A DNA stretch of 64,000 nt, taken from the NCBI GenBank assembly GCA_037379345.1, contig CM074514.1, forward strand, positions 13,392,001-13,456,000. Direction: 5' to 3'. Each line of letters opens with the position of its first letter. The stretch's first letter is position 1. The notes beneath the pieces were generated by a model, which saw nothing but the letters and a program-made list of their open reading frames with translations, ran no database searches and was not told the origin of the DNA. Position numbers and translations under genes: made by a program. This DNA comes from Perna viridis (lineage: Eukaryota). Shown here in pieces: positions 2,698 through 58,798 of the stretch.

Positions 2698-2930
2698 CTC
2701 TTTCAGTGTTGAATTGATTTGCGGTAAAAGTTTGTGTCCTCCCGTCAGCCCCCGTCGAGCATTTACTCTGTACCACATTGAACTGTGGTGTTCGTTCTGT
2801 GCTATTTTTGCCGCTGCAAGTTTAGCTGCCTTTTCTTCAGAAAGATCCCTGTTCCGCCCAAGTTCTTTTGCTAGATGTATGATTTCAGCTCTTTCCTCTT
2901 CGGCATTCGTACTTTCACTATTGTCGTAAT
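2698..2930 (-). CDS. SLC8A: Gene B coding exon 2; the gene continues beyond the left edge of the window
   Basis: Minus-strand translation (D)YDNSESTNAEEERAEIIHLAKELGRNRDLSEEKAAKLAAAKIAQNEHHSSMWYRVNARRGLTGGHKLLPQINSTLKE; enters in phase 1; homologous to gene A exons 2+3. Confidence 0.9.
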
Positions 2931-4564
2931 CTTTAAAAATAAATTTGTCTTATAAAAGATATTTCTTTTCATAATTATAGTCAACAACAACCATACACTT
3001 TGATGGTGATAATCGTTGGATTAAAACGTTTGATTAAAATATGATAAATTGCAATGATAAATGTTAACCGCAATATATACACATCTAACAAAATAGGGTT
3101 ACCTAAATCTTAAAAGCAATATACAGTTTAATTGCTTTGTATTATGTTATCACAGTTCCAGATAAATACTACGACAACAACTCATGCAACTACTTTTTCC
3201 CAAAGCATACAAACAAGCATTTAGTTGGTGTTCATTCCTTGCACTATCTCCATAACCGATCAATAGTACATTATATCAAAAAATGTGCATGGACAAAGAA
3301 GTAGTAACAGAGTAATAGACATTTTTTTTTTATTTATTGCTACTGTAGTCACATGACTTTAAACGATGTAATACTGTAATATGTAATACTAAAATAAGAG
3401 CAGCTTAGAGAAACATACGTATTTGAATGGGATAAAAGTAAGCTTTACTTTAACTATCATTCTGTTCCCTTAATCGAAAGTTTGAAACCAAGCTTGTTAC
3501 AAATATAAACCATCTTATGTAGATGCACACAAAGGTTTTGGAATTTCAAACATGGCCACCATTTCAAAATGGCCGAGGTTCAAATTTTAAAAAATATGTC
3601 AAAAAATTACAAAAAATGTAGAAGGACATACTTAGTTTGAAAATAGGTCACCAGAAGGGCTGCCCATCGGCCATATTAAAAAATCAAAAAGTGGCCGTCA
3701 TACAAAGATTTATTAAAAAATAAGAATATAAAAAGAATAATCATGGAGAAACTGATTTAAAATGCTCCCGTGACAACTTGGAAGCTCGTGGAACATTCTA
3801 TTACGCTGTGCGTAATAATTATATCTAGTTGCATTTAATTTACATTTGCATAAGACACAAAAGCAACCGAGCATTGCAACATAAATCTGCAAGTTATGAT
3901 ATCACGCAAATATGGTATGATCTTGCAGAATGTAGGACAAGGTTACGAAAAACTTTTTTACAAACTAAAATGGTAATAGTTAATTGTTTTTGTTTGTTTG
4001 TTTTTTTTTTTGGTTTTTTTTCATACTTCTTTCATACTTTTGTTAATATAATGGTATACTATTTGCGTGATATTATAATATAAGACTAAGGCCACAATAA
4101 GTAGACACTACCAAGCTGGCAACGTTAGCTTAACACAATATACATTTGTTCATTCCATGTTAGTAAAGTACTGAAATATGGCGACACTGTAGATTCAAAC
4201 TTTTATCGTCTTATGGTAAGTGAATAATGAATGATAACTTAAATCATATTCTCTCTGTAACTGTACATGTATCAAATAAGTAAAGCTTAAATAACAGCAA
4301 AAAAAACCAGTCAAATACGATGTAACGTAAAAGTGAATAGTTAAAAACAAAACTCAAAATATTGGATTGTTTACCACTTTTTAAACAAGGACAATGATTG
4401 GGTACAGACGATAAAGATTTGAGTCTTGGGGATTTGTTAGATTTCATGCATCCCTGTTACCTATTGTTATGCGCACTTTGACATCTTTAATCGTAGTATC
4501 TGATTTTTCACCTAAATGAAATAAATATTTACAATATTGAAGTGATCACTACAGATGTTTTTTT

Positions 4565-8500: not shown

Positions 8501-10191
8501 GAGAAAGAGTAAACACAATATGGGGGTTGTTTTGTAATATTTTATATTTATGATTGGCGGTTAGTCAGTGACTCTTTTTACAATATATTTGATTACCGAG
8601 AGAAAATATGTATGTGACATTTCCAAAACATGTTTTTTAAGCTAATCAATTCATTTAACATCCTACCATGAAACCTCTTTTCAAACGATGCGTTTATTAG
8701 AACTTGGCTGGCAGAAATAACCACAAAAAGTTAGAATTCAACCAGGTCTATTGATTTCTGACATCTTCGTAAAATATTCCGTTCTTTGTGGAACCTTTTG
8801 AATGTTAGCTAAAGTGCTTCACAATTCAATTTACATTTGCATTAATACCCTGCAAAATATCCGCTGCCTCTTTTGATTAAGCAGTAATGGATAATCAAAA
8901 GATCTTTCATGTGTTCAAATTATTCAATAATATAGCAATTTCGCTAACATTTTATAATGTAATAGTCGTATTTGACTTTCTTACGTCAGAGTGAGAACAA
9001 TATGTGACCACTAAATGGTTTTGAATTTTGAGATAAAATGTTTGGTCAGTCTGTCACAGAAATCTCGGGAAGGCAGTGGAAATTACATTGAAATTAAGCT
9101 TTGTTTTTCTTGTTTGTTGTAATTTTTTGTTCTTTTTTTTTCGTAGTACTTTATTTTCACATTTTATGAAACCTTATTCAGGTAAAAAAAAGGAAAATGA
9201 AAAGCGATTAGGAGCTACAAATAAATCAACGGAACTTTAAATTGATTAATTTTGGAAGAAACACTTGGATTGGCCGCTCAATAATAAGTCATGTACATGT
9301 TTTACTGCAAAACTGTAATGAATAAATATTCTATGACCATGGGTTTCTAAATCTGAAGAATATGAAATAAAGCTTTCCCCAAAAGCAAGCGAAGGTGTTG
9401 AATTATTCAGATTTTATGTATCTAGATTCACATAATTTCATGTCTATATTACTTGTGTCCATACAGCTAATTAAGGGGGTGAACGCCTATCTGAATATGA
9501 ATATGCATGTCTTGTCTTGTCTTGTCTTGTCTTGTCTTGTATTATGTTTTGTGTGTGTATACGTATGCCAGTATTGCTCAATTTTTCATTTCCAAAAGCT
9601 AAAGGCAGCCTAAATCTCATCTCCACTATCTAGGTTAAATCTGTAAAATTTAATTGTTTTGTTTCTCTGTTTTGTCATTTTTTTCCTTACGTCTACAAAG
9701 AGAATAGCTATCATCGGTACTACTTGTATTCTCCTTTAGTGTCACCACAACTTGCCTGATCACATTTTTCTCAAACTTTAGTTTTTATATTTTCTTATCT
9801 TATCATTATTTTGCTTTCAATTTTGCTTTCATGCTTACGCACGCAAATAAAATTTATGAACAAAAACAAAACGTCATGATGATTCGTCTCATGACTTGTT
9901 CAAATTCATTTGTGAATTTTACATAATAGTTGCCGCGAATATTGCTTTGAAATGATACTGAAATATAGACCCTTCCTCAGCAACGAGCGGTTCAAATAGT
10001 TTAAATCAAGAGTAGGCTGACGAAGAATTTAATCCATTTCACCCATGAATTCAGTAGAAAACTAGGACAATGTAGGACGGTGGGAAATCTCTCCAAAAAT
10101 TTAATATCCACCATGTGGTTAAAAATCCTCGTGCATTTTTAATCACTGGCTTGTAATGGGAGAAATATAATAACACCTATATTAAGCTTAC

Positions 10192-10849
10192 CTATTCCAA
10201 TTTCCACTTCCGAGGACGTTTTATTGCTTCTTTTACAACAGAAACGTTTGTCAACAGCGTACGACACCAAAATTAGCATAGGAAAAAACAAAAATGTGAC
10301 AACTGCCTCCCATAAATCCACAACGTCGGGTGTGATCACCATGAGCACTAATGCAAGCCATACGTAAGACAAAAGATTAAAAACTGACGTCACAACATAC
10401 ACAGGAACAAGTTTAATTCTTCTAATTTCGTTTTTCGGTATACAAATGACACAAATAGCGGTTATAGCCAACAAGTTAAAGGAAGCTGATCCAACAATAG
10501 TTCCAGGACCTAGCTCTCCTGCCACAAATTTATTTCCACATATTTCTATCACATTGAGCAAAATTTCTGGGGCGCTAGTACCGAAAGCAAGAAGACTTAA
10601 ATTAGCGACAGTGTCATTCCACACTTTAACTTCTACGTCTCTCGTACCCTCTTTTACTTCTGAATCTGCTATCTTAACTATTCTAGTCTTACTAGTAATT
10701 TTTTCTATTGCGCACATGAACGTATCTGCTACTATAGCTATTCCAAGAAATAACCATAGCATGGCAACTAAGTAGAGAATTGCCCGAACTGCAACATGCC
10801 AGTTCGATTCATCCAGAATAGGCAAGATCAGTGCCGTGCAGTTCGACAT
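10192..10849 (-). CDS. SLC8A: Gene B coding exon 1: second NCX paralog (exon begins at 10871)
   Basis: MSNCT...VWNDTVANLSLLAFGTSAPEILL...GPGTIVGSASFN; tttcag acceptor; in-frame upstream TAA; AG|GTAAGC donor, phase 1. Confidence 0.95.
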
Positions 10850-11610: not shown

Positions 11611-12142
11611 AACACTGTGCAGGTGGTATATTGAACTCAGAAAGTATGTTAGGCCTGCAGCAAGACTAAGCATGTCGTAAAAGGCGACTAAATAGTGCTC
11701 AGAACCCTAGCAGGGGCTAGGGCGCTCTGCCCACAGAGCAACTGCGTTGTGTGCCCCAGGTGGTGGAATGGGGTACCCCTGGCGAGTTACATGCTGGGGT
11801 TGTCAGGCTATAATACGGAAAACCTGACCGCAAACCATAGTGGTGCACCGTGTTGGGAAAGATGTCACGTTCCTCACACATTAAAGAACCCTACTGTGGT
11901 ATTCTCCCGTAGTGGGAACCATAGGACTCCGCCACAGGAGGCTAATTTGCCCGACCCTACCCACCACTCCCTATTTCCAGTGGCAATCAAAATTTGTCGA
12001 CCCCATTATCCTTGTGTCCCATCCCATTTTTCATTTCATCATTATTTCATGTTCATTTTATCATCCACTTCATGTTCATCATCTGAATATAGCTGAAATA
12101 TTGCTACTCGGGCGTTAAACCCCAACAAACAAACAAACAAAC
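11611..12142 (+). mobile_element. SINE-like non-autonomous retroelement, copy 1 (structured non-tRNA head, Meta/MESC-like core, (CAAA)n tail)
   Basis: Near-identical to 32535-33056 and 33425-33867; core cacattaaagaaccc; tail atagctgaaatattgct...ggcgttaaaccccaacaaac. Confidence 0.85.
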
Positions 12143-20909: not shown

Positions 20910-21413
20910 NNNNNNNNNNNNNNNNNNNNNNNNNNNNNNNNNNNNNNNNNNNNNNNNNNNNNNNNNNNNNNNNNNNNNNNNNNNNNNNNNNNNNNNNNNN
21001 NNNNNNNNNNNNNNNNNNNNNNNNNNNNNNNNNNNNNNNNNNNNNNNNNNNNNNNNNNNNNNNNNNNNNNNNNNNNNNNNNNNNNNNNNNNNNNNNNNNN
21101 NNNNNNNNNNNNNNNNNNNNNNNNNNNNNNNNNNNNNNNNNNNNNNNNNNNNNNNNNNNNNNNNNNNNNNNNNNNNNNNNNNNNNNNNNNNNNNNNNNNN
21201 NNNNNNNNNNNNNNNNNNNNNNNNNNNNNNNNNNNNNNNNNNNNNNNNNNNNNNNNNNNNNNNNNNNNNNNNNNNNNNNNNNNNNNNNNNNNNNNNNNNN
21301 NNNNNNNNNNNNNNNNNNNNNNNNNNNNNNNNNNNNNNNNNNNNNNNNNNNNNNNNNNNNNNNNNNNNNNNNNNNNNNNNNNNNNNNNNNNNNNNNNNNN
21401 NNNNNNNNNNNNN
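20910..21413. other. Assembly gap (504 N)
   Basis: Run of N. Confidence 1.
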
Positions 21414-21943: not shown

Positions 21944-24247
21944 GAATGTAGGAAAAAAAGTCACTGGAAAAAAAGTCACGGATAAAAATTCACAGGAAAA
22001 AAGTCTCGGATAAAAATTCACAGGAAAAAAGTCACGGATAAAAAGTCACAATACATGAAAAGAAGTATTATATTCAAATCTGAATTATCATCTTAATACT
22101 TCTGTTTTTTAATTTTATTAAATCTATGACATATTTGTTCACCTTTTTTTTTTCATGGGTATACCTTTTCAAGATACTTTATTTAATAGGAAAGAAATAT
22201 GTTAACTGTCAACTTTTATTATTAATTGTCAAACTCATATAATCATATCACATGTATTGTATCTGTATGTTCATTTGTTTGTATATGCTTTGGATTATTG
22301 TAACCCCTCGATAAACTGATTGTTTAAAGACAATAAAAACATGACAAATAAACTAACAATTAATCATTTCTGTTTGAAATGAAGCCATTTCACTGTAACA
22401 GTTATTTTAACAATTTACAAGCACCCAGATAAACTGTATGAAGCCAGATCTGTCAATTAGAATATGACAACACATCCTACCATATTGTGTATGCTTGACA
22501 TGTTTATTCAAATTTGTTTGTTTGACAATTATTTCATGTCCATTGCATATTGTTTTGAAAGGGAAATCCAGACAAATTGGCTACAAATGTAACTTTCAAG
22601 AAGCCCCACTTTAATTGGGACATTATTACGGCATCCTCTATGGCTTCCATCATTTTTGCATATAATGTAGAGCAGATTTCAAATGTCATCACAACCAAAA
22701 TGGAAATCATCACAAGCAACAAAGGCGGTTTGAAGCTTTGCTACCAAGGCTTCATGTACACCAAACATGCTACCAGAAACCAATGGTGGAAGTGTGTTAA
22801 AAGATCAAGCACCGGCTGCAGAGGGTCCATCAGCACAACACTTCAGAATGAAAATCCAGTTCCTCCCCAGCCACACAACCACGCTCCCAATGACACCAGC
22901 ATAAAGTACTCCAAAGCAAGAAACACCATGAAAGATCAAGCCAGCAACACCAAAGACAAGTCTAGCCAGATATTTGCCCAAGTTGTTGCTCAGTGTGAAG
23001 ACAACGTCCCAGCCCTGATGCCAAGAAAAAAGAACTGTAAGAGAACCATACGGTACCAACGGCCAGCATCTCCAGTTCCAGACACACTAGCAGATGTCAG
23101 TTTGCCAGGTGACTTCAAGGAAACATCAAACCAAGCTGACTTTCTACAGTATGACAGCGGCCCAGAGTCACAGAACAGTATCTTAGTCTTCTTCTCACCA
23201 GACAGCCTAGAAAGATTAGTAGATGCCGAGACATTCTACATGAATGGAACCTTTTCTGTGGCTCCCCGTCCATTCAATCAGGATCCCATTTAAAGACGTA
23301 TCCATGACAGCAGTCTACGCCTTCCTACCAAACAAGCACCAGGAGACATATACAGAACTCTTCCAGGCCATCGTTGACAAATGTAACAACAGAAACCTTC
23401 AACTCCACATCCAAACCATAGTCACCGACTTTGAAGACGCCGTTCTACGTGCTGTTGCAGCTGTATATGGCCGTAAGATTAATCACCAAGGATGCTTCTA
23501 GCCACACGGAGGAAGATACAGCACTTTGGTTTGGTCCCACTCTACAACACAGACAATGACTTCAGACTCTTTTGTGGTATGATAGATGGCCTTGCCTTCC
23601 TGATGCAAGAAAGAAGAATAAACTGTACGAACCATGATCCACCAGGAAGCCATCGGCAACCCACCAGTAAGGAGACTCCAGCATCGCTACGTCCAACTGC
23701 AACAACGTTTACAGAACCTCTGCACTTACCTTACCACTGGACAGAAGACTATCCAGCAGTTTCTCCAGGGTGTGGGATTCAACATCAGACTAAACCACAG
23801 ACGTTAAGACTTTCTACCAAATGAACAATCAAAATCTATGTGTTGAGTTGAACATTCAAGTTTATGTTAATAAGTTGAACAATATCCATGTTACATGTGA
23901 TGAACATTGTGATAATTAATCTGTGTCATTTATTTATTCTTTGTTGTTATGTCTTGTGATACTTGCATTGTTATTATTTATTGTAATTTATTAAATGTAC
24001 AAAAATCAGTTGGTCTCTTTACTTATTATCGTTATAAAGTTTGGAAATAAAACAATACAATTTATGCTGAATTAAACATTAAAACATGCCAGAAAATATG
24101 TCAAATATGTCACAACAAATCAGTGTTATATCCACATTTTATACCAGAAGTAAATCTATGTTCACAGCAAAAGTTTCGAGTAAATCATACCAAGTCAGAG
24201 TACTAATATTATTGTGACTTTATTTTCTAACTTTTTTTCCGTTTACC
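21944..24247 (+). mobile_element. MULE/Mutator DNA transposon 1 (FLYWCH + MULE transposase pseudogene)
   Basis: Ends GAATGTAGGAAAAAAAGTCAC ... CTTTTTTTCCGTTTACC with subterminal aaaaagtcac repeats. FLYWCH-like GGLKLCYQGFMY..WWKC..C...HNH; NGTF, TDFE, QGCF* with frameshifts. Imperfect TSD gataagat / gataaaact. Confidence 0.88.
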
Positions 24248-24841
24248 GATAAAACTCTCCTAAAAGAATAATTAAAGTCATTTGGAATCCCATCCAGGTA
24301 CAATTTTTTAACAAAAAGACAATTAAACTTAAAATGGGCGGTAATTCAAACTTTATTTTGTCTAGTCTGGATTACAAGCACAAGGATTTATCCACTATAA
24401 CATTAGGACACTTTCAAGATTACACGCTTAGCCGTTATAAACCTAATCAAAACTCTGTACTTCTTGTGCTAAGTTGTGACATTTTGAAAAGGAATGCAAC
24501 AAGACCAGCCTTACTTGAATTAAATGTGCAGGAAAACATACAACATCTAAATGCACTAGTCAAATAATAAAATGCAACAACTGTAATGGCAACCATCAAG
24601 CCATAGATAAAAAATACCAAGTTTATCAACACCACAAACTGGTTTTACAATACATGTATGTTGATTATTTAAATTTTGACCAGGAAGTCAAAAAGGCTCA
24701 ATCTAAAAGTCAACCTGAAAACAACACCGAAGCCATAAAACCCACCACAGATGACACCACAGGAAGACTACTTCCTATATCACCGGAAATAGTGGTAATT
24801 AATGACAATAAAAACCAATCTTATGCCGAGGCTGTAAAAAC

Positions 24842-26770
24842 GGTAAAGGACGGAAAGTCACAGGACAAAAAGTCATAATTTCGGTAGGACAAAAAGTCAC
24901 AGGACAAAGTCACAAATCATGAATAGGACAAAAAGTCACAATTTTAGTAGGACAAAAAGTCACAATACTTTATATAGCACCATAGACATTTTATACAAAA
25001 CAATAAACAAACAACAATATAAGCACAGAAAGTCAATAAATAAAAAGTTTTGCAATGTTTTCTTTAAACACACGATATCACTTTGAGCATTTTGTTTAAA
25101 CACATGAGTTCATTTTCACTATTGTCACTGTTTTAGCAAACACTGTTGAAAGTCTATTTAGTTAGAAACGTCTATCTCTGCAGCTGTAGTACGTCTACCC
25201 AGGCAAATGTTGAAGGCGACACCATTCAGGAATTCTGGAACTGTCTTTCTGCCTGATACACGGTCTTGGCACAGATTCTGGAGTCGTTTCTGGAGATGAA
25301 CTATCTTCTGCGGAACTCTCTTTGCTGGCTGTGTACCGATTGCGTCTTGGAGAACGATCGTTGTTACAGTAGACTGCTCACGCTGAAACCACTTGAGGAC
25401 GGTCCAAATACTAGAATGAGACGTACCAACCAGTGTGTAGAACTTGTTATTCCAACCTTCGCAGACGTTGTTGGTTCTTGGGTTGCATTCCATAGTGGCT
25501 TTGTGGACACTCCAAACAGCAAGCTGGAACATAGGCGGTGTACGGCGCATCATCAGCTGAGGTTGTTGGTCTGCGTTTAGTTGCTGTACTGGACGGTAGG
25601 TTCCACTAACGTAGGTTGCGTCAAAGTAGTCGACTAAGTCTGCTGTCTCTGCTGGCTCTTCTGGTGTGAGGCGTCGGATGTAGGCATTACCCTTTGGTAA
25701 GTCTTCTATTGGAAGGAAGGCTAAGGCATCTAAGGTGTTGCAGAAGTGGCGGAACACTGGATCACTCATGTAGTGGGTAGATAGTCTGAATTTCTGTATC
25801 TTACGCCAGGTTGCCTGTGTCAGGTGGTAGAAACAGCCTTGGTGCTCAACTTGACGACCGAATACTGCTGAAGTTGCTCTGAGTAGACCATCTTCAAAGT
25901 CGGTTACCACTTTGGTGATGTTGATCTGTAGACCCATGTTGTTGCACTTGTCGATGATTGCTTGGAAGTGTTCTTCATATGCTTGGCGTGACTTCTTCTG
26001 TAGTAGGCTGTAGACAACGGTGATGAAGGTGTTGCCGAATGGTATTCTAATGGTGAAGATCTGCTTAAATAACGGTGGTGCTGTGTCGAAGGTACCATCC
26101 ATGTATAGTGTGTCTGCTGCTGCTAGATGTCTAAGGTTGTCATCTGTTGCAAAGGCAATTATTCTGGTTCTGGCTTCTGGACCATTGTCGTGGAGGAGGA
26201 AAGTCTGCGGGTTAGGAGGTAGTCTGCGATAAGATTGTTGTTTTAATTAGTACATGCAGGTCTGTCCAGATGTTCATGCATTTCCTTGGAAGCCATACAT
26301 CTTTAAAACCACACATTGATTGGTCAAACAAAACTCACAACTTTCACTATGCACCCTCCTATCAAGCCATACAGATTTTGTAGCACATTCATTGGTCATA
26401 AAAAAACTACTGAAAATTTCACTTCTACAAATGTATATCCAACAAAAAAGAAAAAAAATAATACTTCAAAACAATCTTAATGCCTTTTTCATAAAAAATT
26501 AAATATTTGCCTGTAAACTTTAGCAAAACTCTTATTATTTTACCATAATTGAAAAAAAAACTATTTGAAAAAAAAATACAAAACTAAAAATTAATCCCCC
26601 AAAAAATTAAAAAAATATATTTCTATTTCATATTTGCCTTAAAAATTATCAACATTTTATGATTTGTGACTTTTTGTCCTCAATTTCCACTGTGACTTTT
26701 TATCCTGTGACTTTTCGTCCGTGACTTTTTGTCCGTGACTTTTTGTCCTGTGACTTTCCGTCCTACACTC
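24842..26770 (-). mobile_element. MULE/Mutator DNA transposon 2, internally deleted, perfect 9-bp TSD
   Basis: TGTAAAAAC at 24833-24841 and 26771-26779; TIR core AGGACGGAAAGTCACAGGAC; subterminal ggacaaaaagtcac repeats. Confidence 0.93.
25158..26102 (-). pseudogene. MULE transposase catalytic domain (314-aa open frame, N-terminus missing)
   Basis: DGTF, TDFE, GCFYH and RTNNVCEGWN give a complete D-D-E triad plus CxxH; no FLYWCH domain upstream. Confidence 0.85.
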
Positions 26771-49281: not shown

Positions 49282-52200
49282 CTGAAAAAAAAATGTATTT
49301 GAATAGAACAAGATCAGAAAACAAAGCGGAACAAATCATTCAACAAAACATTAATACATGAATCAGAATTTTAACATTACTTTCTTTTTCAAAACTACCT
49401 GTCATACTATAATTACCAATCAATCTTTGTAATCAATTGATCAAGTACTAATACTAATTGATAAGGGGACTCCCTTTTGATTACATTAGAGCTAAGATAA
49501 AAAATTGTAATGATTACAGAAATTTCTCTCGAAATCCTATCAAATAACGCGAAAATCATTTCAAACCATAAAACGATAACGAGGTCCTTGTCTTTATTTA
49601 AAATATCGAACTGAATCTGCCCCTCCCCCTTATAAAATTAAATGGTTGTTTCTATGTTAACTTTAAGATTTGATCTACGTTAAATCACCCTTTGATCATA
49701 TTAATTAAAAGCAATGTATGCCTTTATAATTCTAATAACGATGCTAAGGAGTAACCACATTTATGATCATTTAATTTTTATCGAAAATTGTACAAGCATA
49801 CCTGAGCTGACCAGTATATAGCTGCTATGGACCAAGACACACCAAGACCCATGAAAACATTGACAGCATTACTGCCAGTGACATTGCCGACGGCATTATC
49901 AGCATGTCGTTCTATTGTCGCCGCAGTTCTACTAGCGAACAAATCTGGCAAACTTGTTCCTAAGGCAACAAATGTGATAGCCACTACGTCAGGTTTCAAT
50001 CCAATTAAACATCCAAAGATTGATGCTAAATCACCTATTATGGCAGTAAGTAATCCGATAACAACCAACGCAAAAACAAATGTGAGCCAACCACCTAGAA
50101 TACTGGCTGGTGGAACAAGAGCAAAAATGACCTGAAATTTAATAAAATATAACTTCAATGGTAATTGTACTATCGTTTACTAAATAAAGTAATACAAAAG
50201 TTAAAAATGAAACAAATGGCGTGTCTTTTTAATAGTCCGCATATAAAACAAATAAACTATCAAATTTTCATGACAAGCAAGTGAAATAATACAGTTCTCC
50301 ATAGTTCGTTGACTTTTAAATAACTTTCGAAAAGTTCATTCAAAGATAAATGTATATGACAAAGGTGTTCAAGATGAGATAATTTACGGACAAAAAATTA
50401 AATATTTGTTACACTGCTATAGACAAATAGTTCACAAATGTTTTATGCAAGCCAGTTCAATATTTGTATTCAAAGAACTTTCCAATTCAGTGATTGTATT
50501 GTCTTGAATTATAGAAATATTAATAAGGTAAAACAAGTAATCATCTTTAAAAAACATTAATATCATACATTACCTTCCAACCGAATGTGAAAAAATGCAA
50601 GAGATAGTCTAATAATGTTGCATTCTCTATATCACCTCCATTGACATTCATGGCATCTTGGAATTGTTTTCCCCATGTTGTGTACGACATACGCAAAGAA
50701 TCCAAGTTGGCATTAGTCAAATCGGTAACTCTTGCAACAAATCCTTTAAACTCTGTTAAAATCATGAAAATACGAATTGATACTTTTTTTCCACATTGAT
50801 AAATGAAAGAAATTTTCCACTTCTGTCTAAATTTGTCAAGTTGCCCTGTATTTCCGGTTTTGTGGTATTATCAAACTTCGAAAAATCGTTTTATTTGACA
50901 TCACAGCAACGTGTCTGTCCATGCTTTATATACTTTGTATTTTAGTACGAGAATTGAATATTTTAGTATTTTTAGATTTTTGGATTCCGTCTTTCCACAA
51001 AATTAAGTCTTCAATAGATACATAACATATAAAGAAACTGCTTTGAAATCGAACTACTTTGACTTACCATCGTCGTTAACAATAGTCACAACACATCTTG
51101 TTTTCCTTTTGTCAAGTTCACAATTTCCTTCAACACCAGTCAGTCTTACTTCAAAATTTTCATCTTTTTCAAATTCCTAAAATTTGATGGAAAGTTCTAG
51201 TTGTCAAACAAATAACCATAGAAAAAATATGACATGCGGAATTTTGTTGTTTTCTAAATGTGTTGCATTAAATGGGTTACACAGCTCGTCCAACTCTCTT
51301 ATCCAGCAATCTTTTGAGAAAACTGTGTATATCAATTGTCATGAATGTTCCCTGTGTATGTATGTTTCTTTAGAGAAATTAATAAGTGCCTGAAGTTTAT
51401 TTTTCATATTTTCAAGAGTTTAAACGTTTTTTCGGTAGATGTCTCAAATTTTCTCAACATATATTGTTACAGAGTATTTCGAAACCCAAATCAACTGCAA
51501 AAGTGAACAGCTTTAAGAAAAAAATCAAATGTTTCCATTATTTCTTAATAAATGAATTCCAATTTATGTTGTAGTAGGTCAGGTCAATTGTTTCAGTTAA
51601 TTTATATCATATTTTATTATACATATTTTACATTTAGCGAAACCAGCATATTGTAGTTAATTTATGGTGTAGACTTATGTATAAACCTATGCATAAAGTA
51701 AAGTACCTATTTTGTACAGAAAATATGCTATAAGCAGAAAGGGCATTATGGGAAATAAACATTACGCTTACCATATCGTCTTTAATGCAGATTTCAATCA
51801 TCTTGGAAACTTCCCCTTTCTCAAACACCACTTCCTGTTTATCATCAATGCTATAGTCTCGTCCCTTAACTGCTATTAAGTCCTTGGTATCATATTTAAC
51901 TACGACTTTAGTTTTACATCCTCCCTCGCGTTCAATAGGTATCAATGCTGTTCCAACACTTTCTTTGTATACAAATGCCGGTTTCGGGAAACGAACAACA
52001 TCTTTCACTGTAAAACACATTCAATAGATAAAAAGTATTTGTTACATTAATAGGAAGTTTAAAGAAATTAAGAGAACCAAGATTCTAGCGGAAATCAAAA
52101 GAATGTAATCCAGGGACAAAGACTGGATATGGAAAACAGACATACACAACAACGAACATAAAATAATCAAAATAATACATACAAAGTAACAAAAGTAAAT

Positions 52201-55200
52201 GAACAACTCTGACTCCACTAAATACTGGAAGCATGGACCAGGTGCACCGGTAGGGTAAGCGTCCTCTGCTTTTCTACAGCCGCCGAATTGCTCATAAAAA
52301 GTTAAATCCGGGGTAGACGAAGAGGAAAGGAAAACTAAGACACGTTGAGCAAATCTGTTTTCATGGTGCAGACGGATATATCGTAACGATTCACGAGTTC
52401 ATGATGACGACCATAAAACTTCTGAAGTGAAAACTTTAAATTTATAGAAACATAATCCTGTTCCAGAAGCCTAATTGTAAGAAGTCTAGCGCGATACAAA
52501 AATTCTGCGTAGTTACGTCAAGTATGACATAACGTATGGGCTGTGATATGTTGCCACAGGTGAAAGGAAAGTTGACAATACGGAGTGAAAAGTCATCCTG
52601 TTTGTCGTATAATTTGGTCAATAGTTTTCCTTAACCATCGATATCTAAGTGTAGGTCAAGATATGAGGCTGACTTCACAGTGTCTACAATATCCTTCATC
52701 TCAAGTTCTTTGGGATAGATAAGATGTACCAAATCCCCGAAACTAGGATTTTGAACGATAATACGTCATCTATATAGCGGAAACTGAGTTTAAAGGACAT
52801 AGAAAAACGATGTTCCTTCTTTTGGATCAGATCAGCTATTAAGTCAGCTTCATAGGAGTGAAGGAATAGGTCAGCAAGTAGAGGAGTACAATTTGTACCA
52901 ATTGGAATGACGACCATTTGTTGAAAGACGCATTCACCACACTGGACAAATATGTTGTCGGTATATCTTAAAGACGACTTGGATTTTGTTTTACTGAGTA
53001 TGAGGAATCTGTACCTAGAACTACATATTAGTATCGAGGTGTACCGTCTTTTTTCACAAATGCCATAATCGTTCACCTTTTCCTATTTGCTTATAATATG
53101 AATATTTTAGACGAAGTGTGATTTTTAGAAAACTATCATTCGTAATCTAAATACCATCTCTTTATATTGACATCCTTGTCAACTTACCATCATCGTTTAA
53201 CACTATTATTTGAGTAATAGCTCTCTTTCCAACAACTCCAGGCTCACTAGGGTCGACGGATATCTTTGCGAAGAAAACTTCATCCTCCTCCCAAATATCA
53301 TCATCTACAATATCTATCTCAATATAGTTTATGCTTTCTCCTGGTTCGAACACTAAAGTTTGTTTGAATTCAATATAATCTTCCACGGCTACTGCTGTTC
53401 CGTCGAAAGTTTCAACTCTGAAAACAAATTCAAATATTAACAGAAATAAAAAAGATAAAAAGATACACATTTGTTCTCGAAATGATAAAGTCGCAAGTAA
53501 TTGTTTCTATATAGCTTTTATTTTCCCATATGAATTACTTATATTATTATTTTCTACAGTCTTTGGACATATAGCTACATAAAATATGTCCAAAAAATGT
53601 ATGGTTGCAATAATGACAACACGGATTTATATTAGGAATCATTATCTACTATGATGACATACTGCCTGCTTTTAATTTTCCTATCTAATCTTTTCGTCTG
53701 GAAACAACTTGAGATTTTCTTAAACACAGAGGATGTATACCTAACCTGTGCACATTTTCTAGGTTGGTTTCAAAACTCCATTGCTTTTAATGCCCATTAT
53801 TTAGATGTATTAGTTATCTCTTTTCTTATGGTTTGCGACCACTGATACTTCCACTAAATACCTTAATTGTGATTTCTTTTAATTCTACTTTTAAGTACAA
53901 ATGATTTCAAATTTAAAATGCAATGGTAAAGGATACCTGTATTGTACTCTTCTTTTAATGTTGCCATGTCTCATTATTCCAATTTTTACTCTCTTGTCAC
54001 ATTCAAGGATGGAAGTTGATGGCGCTGCAAACTCAATAATTGCTTTTTCTCCTCCTTGGCTCATTTCAGTCAACGAAACTTGGGAACCCATTTCATCGAC
54101 AGTTAGAAGCGATCTCAAAAGCTAAAACAGACAGGTGAAAACTCAAGATAGGTACCCAAAGGAAGTAGGTCTATAAATCAAAATGAATGGATCAGTAAAG
54201 TTGGGGTGTATGCCTAATGCTATTTTTTTCAGGTTAGAACAAGAACTAGTTATACACGGTAATTTTTATAACTTTTTTGTTAAAACAAACTTAATTTCAC
54301 TGGCAAACAACCAAGACAGACAACTAAAACCTTTAAAATGATTCTATAATTAAAATTGAAAACATTCAAAATCTAGGCCGTAATTTTGTTAATTCCTTCA
54401 CCTCTTCTGTCTAAACATTCATAAGCGGATTCAGCTTATGATTACCGAAAAAGGTTTATTCGCGGTATTTGTCACTTCATGGCCACCAGTGAAGGTTCAG
54501 TTGCATTTACAGCATTACTTCTTACCTCCTCTGTCTTATTATCAATATCACAAGTCAGTTTATGACCACCACTAAGAGTCTTGGTGGCGTTAATAATATC
54601 GTATACCTCTTCTAGTATGAGGGCTCAGATGACATCGTTTAATATTGTACAAGCCGTATATTGTATAGCATAAACTCCTACCTTTTCTGTTCTATCATTC
54701 ATGAAAGGAGTCAGCTTATGATTACCGATGAGGGTTCAGATGGCATAAATTCCTACCTCTTTTCCCTATCATTCATAGGAGGAGTTCCTTTGTGACCACC
54801 AGTAAGAGAACTTAATTGCGTATTTTTTTTTTTGGAGGAGTCAATTTAAGACCGCCAGTAAAAGACTTATAAGTGTTTTAACATCTTCTGTCATGGCATT
54901 TATTGGATATGCAAGTTTATGCTCACAAGTATGATCCCAATAGGCATTAATTTTATTGTTTTTGTTTACCATTTCTGTCCTATTACTCAATAGAAGAGTC
55001 ACTTGATGACCATCACTTGCAGTATTATTGCGTTAATAATAGTGTTCTTCTGTCCAGTCATTCGCGGATGTTGTCAGTTTATGGCCACCAGTGAAGGCTC
55101 AGATGCATATATAGCATTAATTCTTACCACCCCTGTCCCATCACTAATGTTGTAAGTCAGTTTATGACCACCACTAAGACCTCTGGCGGTGCTAATGATA

Positions 55201-58200
55201 TTGTTTATCTCTTCTATTCTGTCATTCACGAGAGTAGTGAGGGTTGAGATAACATTGTTTTGCATACACTCTTACCTTTTCTGTTCTATCATTCATGAGA
55301 GGAGTAAGCTAATGGTCACCACTAAAAGTCCTACTGGCGTTTAACATATTGTTTACTTCTTCTGCCCAGTCATTCATGGGAGGAGTGAGGACGCAGATGA
55401 CATTTACAGCATAATTTGACCTCTATTCATAAGAAGAGTCCACCATCACCGCTAACACTATTACTACGTTAATAATAGCGCTTCTTCTGTCCAGTTAATT
55501 AATTGCCAACAGTGAATGCTCAGATGAACTTTAAAGCATAAATTCTTACCTCTTCTGTTCTATCATTCATGGGAGGAGTCAGTTTGTGACCACCTGTAAG
55601 AGCCCTGATGGCATTAATTCTGTACCATCCTCTACTGTGCTCTTTGTTTTCTTCCATTAGTCGAGCTGTAAGTGTAGCAACTTCTTTTTCTCCAATATTG
55701 GATCTATGTTGCATTCTCTGAAAACGCATTTATAATGTTCTTGTACAAAACAAACACTTGTCCGTTACAAAGCAGTTAAACCAAGACAATAGTAATATCA
55801 AACAAAGACATGAACATTTCTACTAATTCGCAGTTTATTTGTAGGTTTATTACTTCTAAGGTGTAGAGCAATCAATTCAAAGATATTTGTTACCTCACAG
55901 GTAAGAGAGGTTGAAAGTTTTTGGTGAATGTTATTGTTAAAATCTTACTCTTAACATCTCCTGTATAATCTGTCGGTCTGCTTTCTGTTTTTCAAGTAAA
56001 TTCTGAGTTTCATCTCCTACAAAGTAACACATTAATCACAATTATTAAGGCTCTAAATGGTTCAATTGGTGATTTCTAGAACAGAATAATTGGTAAAATT
56101 TCAGATTGAGGCTTCGTGATCTCAATACAGTTAAAGAGATATGTTTGCATTTGAAAGCTAGGAAGATACGGCATGTATATGCTTAAAACGAAAGGGGTGA
56201 ATCAATTAAAAACGAAATAAGTATATAATAAGTACAGTGTGGTTGGTTGTAAGTGAGTATTAAAACAAAATGGTGTCGTTGAATATGGGTCATAAATCCA
56301 AAATCATTTTAAGGACCAAGAAATCGATGAGAGCATGGCCAAACATAGCAACATAGAAAACTTTGATTATTAGTTTCATGTTGACAATATACTCTAGCTG
56401 TTCTACTTTTCAGAATATGTGCACTGGCATTGACATCGCAGCCCAAATCTAGCATTTAACTTTCCAAATGCACCTAGTTTTGGTGGGTGTGTAAACGTAC
56501 CATTAGCAACAGACCTAACAAGCGCTATTTCAAAAGACCATTTAAAATTACAACAGTTTACTTGAAAGTGTATTTACATACAGAGAGAATAAATTTGTCC
56601 ATTTAAACTACATGTATACTATAAACCCCAATATTTCGTCGCAAGCTGAAAATATTAATATAAACAAGTTGCATGCATGAACATTTCAACGGAATATATG
56701 GGGCATCTTTTTAACAGATTATTGAATGTTTGTTTTATACTGAGAAATTAGATGATGACCTGTATAGCTAAAGTAACTTAAAAACACACAAATCGTGTGT
56801 GATATGATTTATCAGTAAACAATGGAGAGTATTTTGATATGAAAGATGGATATCCCTCCAGTCCATGTTAGATGTTCCTAGTTTTAGACGAGTCCGGGTT
56901 CAATCACTCTAACTTTTTGTGTGTTTGCTACATATACATTGTTGTTTAGGTCAATTTTTATAACTGTTCTTTGGGTTTTTACATCTACTTCTGAGCAATC
57001 TGTCGCTTCAATTTTCAAATTCTATGACACTTTTTTTCTTAGAAACTTGAATGTGTCCTCTTATAAAAAGACAAACAAAACTGGCTACACGATTTCATAT
57101 AAACAAATGTAGACATTTATAGAATAAAAAAACTACCTGGATTTTATATATATATATACATTATTGGCCTCTGACTTGCTATGAAACTAGCTTAATATTT
57201 AGAATTACTAAATTTACCTTAGTAAATTGTGTAATCCTTCAATAAAGAGATATCAAAGTTTAAAACGAAAAACATGCTATTTGTTCAATGCACACTGTTA
57301 ATATATCGGAAACTTAAGAAACCAGTGGCAGACCCAGAAGAGTGTTCAGGTGATTGGAACCCAAATTTGTTGTGAGTTTGTCAATTTTATGCTAATATGG
57401 GGAAAATTTGACGAATAATAGCCTGGACACCCCACTGCCACCCTCACCCTCAAATGAAAATAAATTCTGGCTTGCACTCCCCCTTTTGTTTATAAATTTC
57501 AGCTTTGCATTTTCTTTCATTTGGTACAGGACAAATAATGGCTCTCGATTCTGACGGAAAACGGTTGAGTTATGTTAAAGTTTAAAATTTCCATATAATT
57601 CAAACTTAAATACTTCAATCGTACAGGGTTTATTAAATTTCATTAACAACAAATAAGGACTGTGTGTTTGTATTGTTTTGTTGGGGTATCTTGGTGATTC
57701 ACAATTACAATAAATTAAATATACAAATAAAATACAACAAACTAACAACGAATTTGAAAACGAGAAAAAATAAAATAAAAAAAAATTAAGTGAAATTCTA
57801 CGACATAAACAATGGTGCATATATTTCAAACCTTTTGTGGTAAAATCTCCATCAAGTGCTTTTGTAGAAGAAAAAATAAAAAAAATATTAAGCATGCTTT
57901 GTAAAACGGCATTAAATCAGCCTTTCATTTATAGAAAGTGTAATGCACATTCAATGAGCGAACCAGCACGAAATATGTTTAAATGTTTAAATGAAATTTG
58001 TGAAACCTACAGTCAAAATAATACAATTTTGTTGGTTATGCGAAAGTAATTTATTTCAAGCAATTGTATATTTTCTGTACTGCTTAGGTAAGAGTTGTGT
58101 CCCCTTCTTTACCTACCCATTTCAAGTCCAGCATCTTGCACACTCCCTTTTCCACAGAAATCTTTATCTATTATATAGGCGATGAGAACCAGGATGGGGA

Positions 58201-58798
58201 AGAACAGAAAGGTCAGAACTGCCTCCCAGACGTCAATGTAATCAGGAGTTATTGCTACTAATACCACCAAAATCCACAAATATGCTAACGTAGAGAAAAC
58301 AGCAGTCACTAAAAATACTTTAAATTTGTCTATCCTTCTGCTCTCTCCTTTTGTAACAGATATAACGCATACGCCGGTAATACACATTAAATTAAAAGCT
58401 GCCGAACCGACAATGGTCCCTGGACCAAGTTCGCCAGCTTTGAAATTGTTGCCAACTACTTCTATAATAGAAAGTAAAATTTCTGGCGCACTCGACCCAA
58501 GCGCCATTAAAGTCAAGTTGGCAACAGTACCATTCCACATTTTGATTTCGACTTCTGTATAACCAGTTTCAGATTCTGCATCTGGAACTTGAAGTTTCTG
58601 TGTTTTACTAGTAATTGCTTCAATACCCTGCATGAAAATATCTGCGATAATAGAAACGCCCATGAAACTCCATAATAGTCCAATTATGTAGATGGTAACT
58701 CTTGCTTCTTTTGGCCATGTGTATTCGTTTACAAAGGGCATCAACAAACCCTTATCGGAACAGAGATATTCTTCGCACACAGTGCAATTTGTTGCCAT
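49042..58798 (-). CDS. SLC8A: Gene A: complete Na+/Ca2+ exchanger (NCX/SLC8/Calx family), 10 coding exons: 58798-58117, 56016-55949, 55717-55550, 54121-53937, 53417-53188, 52007-51772, 51176-51068, 50752-50574, 50131-49802, 49281-49042 (808 aa)
   Basis: All introns are GT-AG with consistent phases (1,0,0,2,1,0,1,0,0). Exon lengths sum to 2427 nt = 808 codons plus TAG. Motifs: alpha-1 ALGSSAPE...GTIVGSAAFN, alpha-2 ALGTSLPD...NVTGSNAVN, two Calx-beta domains. The symbol is family-level only. Confidence 0.95.
49802..50131 (-). CDS. SLC8A: Gene A exon 9 (alpha-2 repeat)
   Basis: VIFALVPP...IGDLASIFGC...AITFVALGTSLPDLFAS...NVTGSNAVNVF. Confidence 0.96.
50574..50752 (-). CDS. SLC8A: Gene A exon 8
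   Basis: EFKGFVARVTDLTNAN...TWGKQFQDAM...DYLLHFFTFGWK matches the NCX SWREQF...DYVMHFLTVFWK region. Confidence 0.93.
51068..51176 (-). CDS. SLC8A: Gene A exon 7 (CBD2, second part); not in the ORF track
   Basis: EFEKDENFEVRLTGVEGNCELDKRKTRCVVTIVNDD; ttttag acceptor and GTAAGT donor; phases fit. Confidence 0.9.
51772..52007 (-). CDS. SLC8A: Gene A exon 6 (CBD2, first part)
   Basis: FPKPAFVYKESVG...AVKGRDY...FEKGEVSKMIEICIKDDM; tttacag acceptor and GTAAGC donor. Confidence 0.92.
52066..52960 (-). mobile_element. 5'-truncated Penelope-like (Naiad-type) copy in the intron between gene A coding exons 5 and 6, sense to the gene
   Basis: IPIGTNCTPLLADLFL..YE, FRYIDDVL, SASYLDL, plus the same 3' tail. 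Confidence 0.88.
53188..53417 (-). CDS. SLC8A: Gene A exon 5 (CBD1 core)
   Basis: TFDGTAVAVEDY...IVDDDIWEEDEVF...IIVLNDD Calx-beta acidic motifs; tttcag acceptor and GTAAGT donor. Confidence 0.93.
53937..54121 (-). CDS. SLC8A: Gene A exon 4 (start of CBD1)
   Basis: LLRSLL...IIEFAAPSTSILECDKRVKIGIMRHG; ttttag acceptor and AG|GTATCC donor. Confidence 0.9.
54391..55620 (-). repeat. Degenerate tandem array (~75-81-nt unit, at least 12 copies) derived from the 3' end and splice donor of gene A exon 3
   Basis: Recurring gtcagtttatgaccacc (GGHKLT on the minus strand) and cttacctcttctgttctatcattcat motifs, e.g. at 54431, 54471, 54554, 54710, 54784, 54840, 54998, 55073, 55156, 55304, versus the exon copy at 55578. 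Confidence 0.9.
55550..55717 (-). CDS. SLC8A: Gene A exon 3 (cytoplasmic helical region, HSRGWYRINAIRALTGG)
   Basis: Matches the NCX1 KSRAFYRIQATRLMTG motif; tttcag acceptor and GAG|GTAAGA donor; 168 nt. Confidence 0.92.
55949..56016 (-). CDS. SLC8A: Gene A exon 2 (68 nt, (G)DETQNLLEKQKADRQIIQEMLR); not in the ORF track
   Basis: ctttgtag acceptor and GTAAGA donor. It bridges phase 1 (exon 1) to phase 0 (exon 3) exactly and aligns with the start of gene B exon 2. Confidence 0.85.
58117..58798 (-). CDS. SLC8A: Gene A coding exon 1 (TM1-5, alpha-1 repeat); exon begins at 58813
   Basis: ORF 58109-58798 MATNCT...WNGTVANLTLMALGSSAPEILLSIIEV...; acceptor tttctag before 58813; in-frame TAA upstream of the ATG; donor G|GTAGGT, phase 1. 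Confidence 0.95.

What the first reader, a model, noticed from the sequence alone, without database searches (positions are those of the whole stretch)
54391..55620. Intronic array of at least 12 copies of an NCX exon end, about nine retaining a 5' splice site
Seen: the intron after gene A exon 3 is mostly built from diverged tandem copies of that exon's last ~25 codons plus its donor (unit INAIRALTGGHKLTPPMNDRTEE|GTAAGA). GT is retained at the equivalent position near 55355, 55274, 55126, 54968, 54755, 54680, 54605, 54524 and 54400; three copies keep GTAAGA. Higher-order duplications are visible (54465-54730 vs 55065-55330, and 54985-55060 vs 55425-55500). Reading past the true donor hits TGA at 55520, and the copies have no obvious acceptor. 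Inference: this is a ladder of competing or decoy donors. Using a downstream donor would give an NMD target or a half exchanger (TM1-5 only), so the array could tune expression through copy number. It may instead be a neutral slippage relic.
Basis: partly seen in the sequence, partly recalled or inferred. Interest (0 to 1): 0.8.

Follow-up and report, generated by a model that had tools for sequence, protein, structure and literature searches.

The report
Decayed splice-donor repeat in NCX intron
The last 25 codons and splice signal of one exon of a sodium/calcium exchanger gene were copied about 16 times into the following intron; the copies have since decayed, only the first splice signal is seen in use, and close relatives lack the repeat, so it looks like a tolerated by-product of a known kind.

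Summary
Exon 3 (55717..55550, minus strand) of an NCX gene ends in a 75-nt unit: 23 codons plus GTAAGA. The first 1159 nt of the 1428-nt intron that follows are tiled by 16 diverged copies of that unit (62-85% alike). Eleven copies keep GT at the donor-equivalent place, and five are about as complementary to U1 as the true donor.

The array is not an assembly artefact. Contigs from a second individual cross it colinearly. The unit occurs nowhere else in the 723-Mb genome.

RNA contigs from three studies show one junction only, 55550->54121, from the first donor.

Two related species have the orthologous intron (515 and about 1089 nt) with a single unit. Three paralogous copies in this genome also lack the array.

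Among themselves the intronic copies show no codon-position bias, carry stops, and have no usable acceptors.

Best reading: an old, species-specific, degenerate exon-boundary minisatellite. This kind is already known from amphioxus 'mirages', human F7 intron 7 and ABCA7 intron 18. The spliceosome ignores it, and it has nearly tripled the intron.

The decoy-donor 'expression dial' idea is not supported, but contigs cannot exclude rare junctions. The scan has noted the same kind of array at other loci of this genome.

The parts
55550..55717 (-). Exon 3 of NCX gene A (168 nt, 56 codons). It encodes ...RLMEENKEHSRGWYRINAIRALTGGHKLTPPMNDRTEE.
   Evidence: Both junctions are seen in RNA contigs of 2-3 runs. 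Translation. Weak Pfam Na_Ca_ex_C match.
55544..55618 (-). Founder unit: the last 69 nt of exon 3 plus GTAAGA. It is exactly 75 nt, or 25 codons (INAIRALTGGHKLTPPMNDRTEE+VR).
55544..55552 (-). Authentic 5' splice site GAG|GTAAGA (G at 55549). It is the only donor of this intron seen in RNA.
   Evidence: Junction 55550->54121 in X12, X17 and X19. 7/9 match to consensus and U1 duplex -9.6 kcal/mol.
54385..55543 (-). Array of 16 diverged units (57-88 nt each, intact ones 75 nt), making up 81% of the intron.
   Evidence: nhmmer hits and tiling. Self-BLAST against shuffles.
55520..55522 (-). First in-frame stop (TGA) when reading past the authentic donor. Use of any internal donor would therefore give a premature stop.
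   Evidence: ORF 55520..55729; sequence.
55270..55278 (-). Pseudo-donor AAG|GTAAGA (unit 4).
   Evidence: 7/9, -9.5 kcal/mol.
55122..55130 (-). Pseudo-donor GTG|GTAAGA (unit 6).
   Evidence: 6/9, -8.0 kcal/mol.
54751..54759 (-). Pseudo-donor GAG|GTAGGA (unit 11).
   Evidence: 6/9, -9.3 kcal/mol.
54676..54684 (-). Pseudo-donor AAG|GTAGGA (unit 12).
   Evidence: 6/9, -9.2 kcal/mol.
54520..54528 (-). Pseudo-donor GAG|GTAAGA (unit 14), identical to the authentic 9-mer.
   Evidence: 7/9, -9.6 kcal/mol.
55060..55320 (-). Higher-order block, copy 1.
   Evidence: 74% identical over 269 nt to 54458-54726 (family D5).
54458..54726 (-). Higher-order block, copy 2.
54122..54384 (-). Non-repetitive 3' part of the intron, with the pyrimidine tract and the acceptor.
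   Evidence: No unit hits. Acceptor ...ctgtctgttttag|.
53937..54121 (-). Exon 4 (LLRSLLTVDEMGSQVSL...), joined to exon 3 in RNA.
   Evidence: translation.

Best explanation
This is a fossil exon-boundary minisatellite of the 'mirage' type. A 75-nt segment holding the last 23 codons of NCX exon 3 plus the first six intron bases (GTAAGA) was duplicated in tandem. The first duplication probably arose by slippage between the near-identical words GGTACAGA and GGTAAGA, which lie 76 nt apart (inferred). The intronic copy was then amplified further, partly in blocks of several units, after this species' lineage split from its closest available relative. The copies have since decayed neutrally. The spliceosome uses only the first, authentic donor, which lies at the normal distance from the exon's acceptor. 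The downstream look-alike donors stay silent, as in human F7 intron 7. The net effect is a longer intron: 1428 nt against 515 nt in the close relative. Shown here: the structure, its uniqueness in the genome, its presence in a second individual, the single junction in RNA contigs, its absence from orthologues and paralogues, and the lack of coding-like constraint. Inferred: the slippage mechanism, the silence of the pseudo-donors at low level, and the lack of function.
For: Structure: 16 units tile 55543-54385, and four intact units are exactly 75 nt. Not a dispersed repeat: the unit and the whole array match only this intron in the 723-Mb genome and in the window. Not an artefact: DNA contigs of run X3, a different haplotype with SNPs, cross the array colinearly with one substitution (55344) and no indel. 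Splicing: RNA contigs of three studies all carry 55550->54121 (GT..AG), and none carries a junction from an internal donor. Species-specific: the closer relative (exon 1 93% aa, exon 3 85% nt) has a 515-nt intron with one unit (L021/L022). Its transcript-derived protein P0124 reads ...TPTMNDKTEE|MLRSLL.... The farther relative has a ~1089-nt intron with one unit (L013-L020). Paralogues: gene B, a third NCX gene and a pseudogene-like copy on another chromosome each have a single unit. Timing: at sites where this species' exon is derived, most units carry the derived base, for example G in 9 of 12 at column 59. Neutral decay: divergence from the intronic consensus is 0.248/0.213/0.248 at codon positions 1/2/3, p=0.57. 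Most units carry stops or truncations. The closest pair of copies is only 85% alike, so there has been no recent turnover. Precedent: F7 IVS7 pseudo-sites are functional but silent because the most upstream site is chosen (PMC1557585). Amphioxus mirages do not disturb splicing (PMC3087553).
Against: Five pseudo-donors remain as U1-complementary as the true donor after 15-38% divergence. GT is kept in 11 of the 12 units that retain that segment, against roughly 7 expected from the mean per-site divergence. This hints at constraint. However, many other columns of the unit are equally invariant, the copies share ancestry, and the alignment is anchored on the conserved core. Only contigs, not raw reads, were available, so rare or NMD-degraded isoforms from internal donors cannot be excluded. 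One RNA run has a low-depth 191-nt contig inside the array (54844-55034). I take it for pre-mRNA, but that was not shown.
Confidence: 0.8

Rival explanations
1. Decoy or competing donor ladder. The strong pseudo-donors bind U1 and either yield a fraction of PTC-containing, NMD-targeted transcripts or slow intron removal. In this way the array would set NCX output.
For: Five pseudo-donors have U1 duplex energies of -8.0 to -9.6 kcal/mol against -9.6 for the true site. GT is retained in 11 of 12 units that keep the segment. Use of any of them would meet the TGA at 55520. The human ABCA7 donor-anchored VNTR does affect splicing and shows low-level use of a second-unit donor (PMC5954066).
Against: No internal-donor junction appears in RNA contigs of three studies. 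The array is absent in two related species and in the paralogues, so it is not a conserved regulatory device. Over the 9-nt donor motif, divergence ranks 12th lowest of 71 windows, which is not exceptional. The unit count is identical in a second haplotype, so no copy-number 'dial' is visible. In F7, equally strong pseudo-sites do not compete.
Confidence: 0.1
2. Fossil or cryptic coding repeat. The array was, or still is in some isoform, a 25-residue tandem repeat inserted in the cytoplasmic loop, later cut out by use of the first GTAAGA.
For: The unit is exactly 25 codons and GTAAGA reads in frame as Val-Arg. Two units (55196-55122, 54594-54520) are still open. Compared with the exon copy, third codon positions differ most (35% against 25% and 22%, p=0.0016).
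Against: The third-position excess vanishes when the intronic copies are compared with their own consensus (p=0.57). It therefore comes from differences between the exon copy and the intronic consensus, half of them at third codon positions, each counted once per copy. A stop follows 9 codons after the donor, and most units have stops, frameshifts or truncations. The mRNA-derived protein of the close relative and the RNA contigs here carry a single unit. Across NCX proteins this motif is single-copy (general knowledge of SLC8 sequences).
Confidence: 0.03
3. A dispersed repeat (transposon, SINE or satellite) that happens to overlap the exon end, or an assembly artefact.
For: The window is rich in repeats and transposon fragments.
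Against: The unit occurs only in this intron genome-wide. The founder unit is conserved NCX coding sequence shared with orthologues and paralogues. An independent DNA run assembles through the array.
Confidence: 0.01

Closest known systems
Amphioxus 'mirage' minisatellites (Adh3 and globin genes; Ebner et al. 2010, PMC3087553, which cites the Adh3 work)
   Same: Both are tandem repeats whose unit spans an exon-intron boundary, so splice signals are repeated in the intron. Unit lengths fall in the same range (10-160 bp). Regular splicing is undisturbed. That paper also reports degenerate mirage repeats inside an intron.
   Different: Amphioxus mirages are young (81-100% identity) and vary in length between haplotypes and even somatically. 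This array is old (62-85%), shows no recent turnover, and has the same length in two haplotypes. It lies in a bivalve, not a cephalochordate.
Human F7 intron 7 37-bp VNTR (Borensztajn et al. 2006, PMC1557585)
   Same: The first element spans the exon-intron boundary. The authentic donor is followed by pseudo-donors that stay silent because the most upstream site is selected.
   Different: In F7 the unit is 37 bp, the pseudo-sites are identical in sequence and the array is polymorphic. Here the unit is 75 nt, carries 69 nt of coding sequence and is heavily decayed. Silence here is shown only by contigs, not by mutagenesis.
Human ABCA7 intron 18 25-bp VNTR (De Roeck et al. 2018, PMC5954066)
   Same: The tandem array starts at, and includes, the exon's splice donor. 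Use of a second-unit donor would give a frameshift or PTC.
   Different: The ABCA7 unit is purely intronic and highly length-variable (12 to ~427 units). Its length correlates with exon skipping and disease risk. No such effect or variation is shown here.
Intron gain or extension by tandem genomic duplication (Rogers model; Hellsten 2011 and Gao & Lynch 2009, as reviewed in PMC3443670)
   Same: An internal tandem duplication carries splice signals, and the duplicated part ends up spliced out without changing the protein.
   Different: No new intron is created here. An existing intron is lengthened from its 5' end, and the duplication was iterated about 16 times.

Membership tests
Exon-boundary ('mirage'-type) minisatellite | Head-to-tail repeats whose first unit spans the exon-intron boundary | tested here: met
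   The founder unit 55618-55544 (69 nt of exon plus GTAAGA) is followed directly by 16 units down to 54385.
Exon-boundary ('mirage'-type) minisatellite | The splice signal is repeated in the units (pseudo-donors) | tested here: met
   GT at the equivalent place in 11 of 16 units; five have U1 complementarity close to the true site.
Exon-boundary ('mirage'-type) minisatellite | Regular splicing from the authentic site; pseudo-sites not used in the main mRNA | tested here: met
   Only 55550->54121 appears in RNA contigs of three studies. Rare use is not testable with contigs.
Exon-boundary ('mirage'-type) minisatellite | Length instability or polymorphism typical of minisatellites | tested here: inconclusive
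   A second haplotype (run X3) has the same length, with one SNP and no indel. The closest units are only 85% alike. This looks like a minisatellite that is no longer active, but only two haplotypes were seen.
Exon-boundary ('mirage'-type) minisatellite | Derived, lineage-specific state (single unit in orthologues) | tested here: met
   Single unit in L021/L022 (515-nt intron) and in L013-L020 (~1089-nt intron). Derived bases are shared with this species' exon.
Regulatory decoy splice sites / regulated unproductive splicing | Transcripts that use the alternative sites | tested here: inconclusive
   None seen in contigs. Raw reads and NMD inhibition were not available.
Regulatory decoy splice sites / regulated unproductive splicing | Conservation of the element across related species | tested here: not met
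   Absent in two related species and in the paralogues.
Regulatory decoy splice sites / regulated unproductive splicing | Donor motifs conserved beyond the neutral background of the unit | tested here: inconclusive
   The GT columns are nearly invariant, but so are many other columns. The 9-mer ranks 12th of 71 windows. The copies are not independent.
Coding tandem repeat | Open reading frame through the units and codon-position bias in their divergence | tested here: not met
   Stops and truncations in most units. No bias against the intronic consensus, p=0.57.
NCX / SLC8 sodium-calcium exchanger (host gene) | Two Na_Ca_ex membrane domains and Calx-beta domains | tested here: met
   Pfam PF01699 on exon 1 (1.7e-22) and on 49778-50158 (4.1e-20); PF03160 on 53162-53470 (2.9e-13).

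The most novel reading that the evidence does not exclude
The silent but still strong pseudo-donors are kept because U1 binding along the first kilobase of the intron matters, for example by setting splicing kinetics, yielding a small NMD-targeted fraction, or suppressing premature cleavage. More broadly, this mussel genome may generate donor-anchored minisatellites by a splice-site-linked mechanism and not by ordinary slippage. That would make it a natural system for studying 5' splice-site choice and intron growth.
Probability: 0.07. Interest if true: 0.6.

Novelty: new member of a known kind. Interest (0 to 1): 0.25.

Why it matters
As a single locus it matters little. It is one more exon-boundary minisatellite, of a kind described in amphioxus and in human F7 and ABCA7, and it appears to be ignored by splicing.

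Its modest value is as an aged example:
- Such arrays can persist long after they stop turning over.
- They can become ordinary-looking intron filler. Here the intron is 1428 nt against 515 nt in the close relative.
- They can leave several full-strength but unused donors downstream of the real one, a natural test of the rule that the first donor after the exon wins.

The scan has noted many similar arrays in this genome. A genome-wide census of their ages, and of whether they sit at donors more often than chance, would be more informative than this locus alone.

Tried and rejected
- Tandem Repeats Finder found nothing in the region because the copies are too diverged. A profile search was needed.
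- The codon-position test against the exon copy gave a seemingly significant third-position excess. I rejected it as an artefact of counting the exon-versus-consensus differences in every copy. Against the intronic consensus it vanishes.
- The exon-1 protein search found relatives, but their contigs (L010-L012) stop before exon 3. The exon-3 ORF search and its 90% cluster gave the useful loci.
- The Rfam scan of 53800-56100 gave only a chance-level snoZ5 hit: 22.6 bits against a gathering score of 60, E=0.93.
- Dispersed-repeat and assembly-artefact readings were rejected.
- MaxEnt-type splice scoring was not available. I used matches to CAG|GTAAGT and duplex energy with the U1 5' end, taken from general knowledge.
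- The paper by Gao & Lynch (2009) is not held in the library. It is cited only through the review PMC3443670.
Exons were searched one by one by reference.
- The N run at 20910-21413 was left alone.
Full report
**Host gene**

The finding lies on the minus strand, in a gene for a sodium/calcium exchanger (NCX/SLC8). Pfam finds Na_Ca_ex on the first exon ORF (58109-58798) and on 49778-50158, and Calx-beta on 53162-53470. RNA contigs of three probable RNA runs from three studies fix the first four exons:
- exon 1 ends at 58117 or 58116 (the joint is ambiguous by one base);
- exon 2 is 56014/56015..55949;
- exon 3 is 55717..55550;
- exon 4 is 54121..53937.

Exon 3 encodes ...RLMEENKEHSRGWYRINAIRALTGGHKLTPPMNDRTEE and ends at GAG|GTAAGA. 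I scanned exons one by one by reference and built no joined model.

- A profile made from six copies finds the exon end and 15 further hits, all between 54398 and 55513. It finds nothing else in the window.
- With the gaps between hits filled in, 16 units tile 55543..54385. That is 1159 of the 1428 intron bases.
- Four units are intact and exactly 75 nt (55618-55544, 55196-55122, 54750-54676, 54594-54520). This is 25 codons, with GTAAGA reading in frame as Val-Arg.
- Self-BLAST gives 28 pairs at E<1e-4 against none in 20 shuffles.
Three units keep GTAAGA.
- Five pseudo-donors (G at 55275, 55127, 54756, 54681, 54525) pair with the U1 5' end at -8.0 to -9.6 kcal/mol, against -9.6 for the true donor.
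- Reading past the true donor meets TGA at 55522-55520.
- No AG with a good pyrimidine tract lies inside the array.

**It is real DNA and unique**

- DNA contigs of run X3 differ from the assembly by several SNPs, so they come from another haplotype. They cross the whole array colinearly, with one substitution (55344) and no indel.
- Both the whole array and the single unit match only this intron in the 723-Mb genome.
- The founder unit is conserved NCX coding sequence shared with paralogues and orthologues. The array therefore derives from the exon, not the reverse.

**Splicing**

All three RNA runs carry the junction 55550->54121 (GT..AG). None carries a junction from an internal donor. One run has a low-depth 191-nt contig inside the array (54844-55034), most simply pre-mRNA. 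These are assembled contigs, which drop rare forms. Low-level or NMD-degraded use of internal donors is therefore not excluded.

**Comparative evidence**

Within the genome, none of three paralogous copies has an array:
- gene B, with exon 3 at window 2704-2850;
- a third NCX gene about 420 kb away (L005);
- a pseudogene-like copy on another chromosome (L004). It carries exon 3, a ~265-nt intron and exon 4, with stops and a frameshift.

Across species, two relatives were reached:
- The exon-3 ORF search and its 90% cluster led to a closer relative, with exon 1 93% aa and exon 3 85% nt identical. In L021/L022 the orthologous intron is 515 nt and the profile finds only the exon end. A transcript-derived 811-aa protein of that species reads ...TPTMNDKTEE|MLRSLL....
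- In a farther relative (L013-L020, about 75% nt in exons) the intron is ~1089 nt and again holds one unit.

At sites where this species' exon is derived relative to both relatives, most units carry the derived base. At one site all units share a base that the exon lacks. This suggests that the later amplification started from an intronic copy. The array therefore arose in this lineage after the split from the closer relative.

**Tests for constraint**

Compared with the exon copy, the units differ most at third codon positions (p=0.0016). That excess comes from differences between the exon copy and the intronic consensus, each counted once per copy. Against the intronic consensus the three positions diverge alike (0.248, 0.213, 0.248; p=0.57). 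This contradicts the scan's other note that the units diverged like protein.

The GT columns are nearly invariant, but so are many other columns. The 9-nt donor motif ranks 12th lowest of 71 windows for divergence. The copies share ancestry, and the alignment is anchored on the conserved core. I therefore see no sound evidence of selection on the donors, though a mild excess cannot be ruled out.

**Origin**

In both relatives, which lack the array, the words GGTACAGA (GGTATAGA in the farther one), inside the exon, and GGTAAGA (AGTAATGA in the farther one), at the donor, lie 76 nt apart. Slippage or unequal exchange between them would produce just this 75-76-nt tandem duplication. This is inference. 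A 75-nt unit is in frame, so even occasional use of the second donor in the young duplication would have added 25 residues and not shifted the frame. That may have eased its survival, which is also inference.

**Comparison with what is known**

- Tandem repeats that span an exon-intron boundary were named 'mirages' in amphioxus. They do not disturb splicing, and degenerate examples inside introns are reported (PMC3087553).
- The human F7 intron 7 VNTR has a first element that spans the boundary. Its pseudo-donors are functional yet silent, because the most upstream site is chosen (PMC1557585).
- The human ABCA7 VNTR starts at the donor, and its length affects splicing (PMC5954066).
- Tandem duplication is also an accepted route to intron gain (PMC3443670).

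This locus meets the structural features of the mirage kind. It differs in being old, with units 62-85% alike, no visible recent turnover and equal length in two haplotypes.

Earlier notes of this scan list many such arrays elsewhere in this genome and gave me the F7 and mirage leads. I checked the two papers. In part I also checked one locus: L023 holds two arrays of 68-76-nt units with a GTAAGA-like word.

**Verdict**

It is a new member of a known kind and of low to moderate interest. The decisive test I could not run is counting raw RNA reads at the internal donors, with and without an NMD block.

Noticed in passing
window 10139-10849 (-) and 2704-2850 (-); L005 = G000:C4:13864791-13867910: The NCX gene is one of a local family. 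A second NCX gene (gene B) lies ~45 kb downstream in the same orientation, and a third about 420 kb away. Neither has the array.
   Followed up: partly
L004 (G000:C2:66017663-66020800), about 1056-1652: Pseudogene-like genomic copy of exon 3, a ~265-nt intron and exon 4 of gene A on another chromosome. Exons are 70-80% identical, with two stops and an internal deletion in exon 3 and a frameshift in exon 4. It has no array.
   Followed up: partly
window 52335-53076 (-): ORFs inside a gene A intron resemble a reverse-transcriptase fragment of a retroelement (…IPIGTNCTPLLADLFLHSYEADL…). Not examined further.
   Followed up: no
window 11695-12096 (+), 32560-32916 (-), 33467-33865 (-); L013 10970-11230: A repeated element whose ORFs share motifs (…NTENLTANHSGAPCWERC…PDPTHHSLFPVAIK…) occurs three times in the window. 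I did not compare it with the repeat-like stretch that sits in the orthologous intron of the farther relative.
   Followed up: no
window 22577-26102: Transposase-like ORFs (238 aa on +, 314 aa on -) lie between the two NCX genes, next to an N run at 20910-21413, which was left untouched.
   Followed up: no
L023 (G000:C4:6557800-6561300) 1-523 and 3182-3501: Two young tandem arrays lie 2.7 kb apart and both run off the fetched stretch. One has a 76-nt unit (99% alike, contains ATGGTAAGA). The other has a 68-nt unit (88% alike, contains GTAAGA on the minus strand). This fits the scan's notes that donor-bearing arrays recur in this genome.
   Followed up: partly
window 54844-55034: A 191-nt, low-depth contig of a probable RNA run (X17) lies wholly inside the array. 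It is probably pre-mRNA or DNA carry-over. Its strand is unknown.
   Followed up: no
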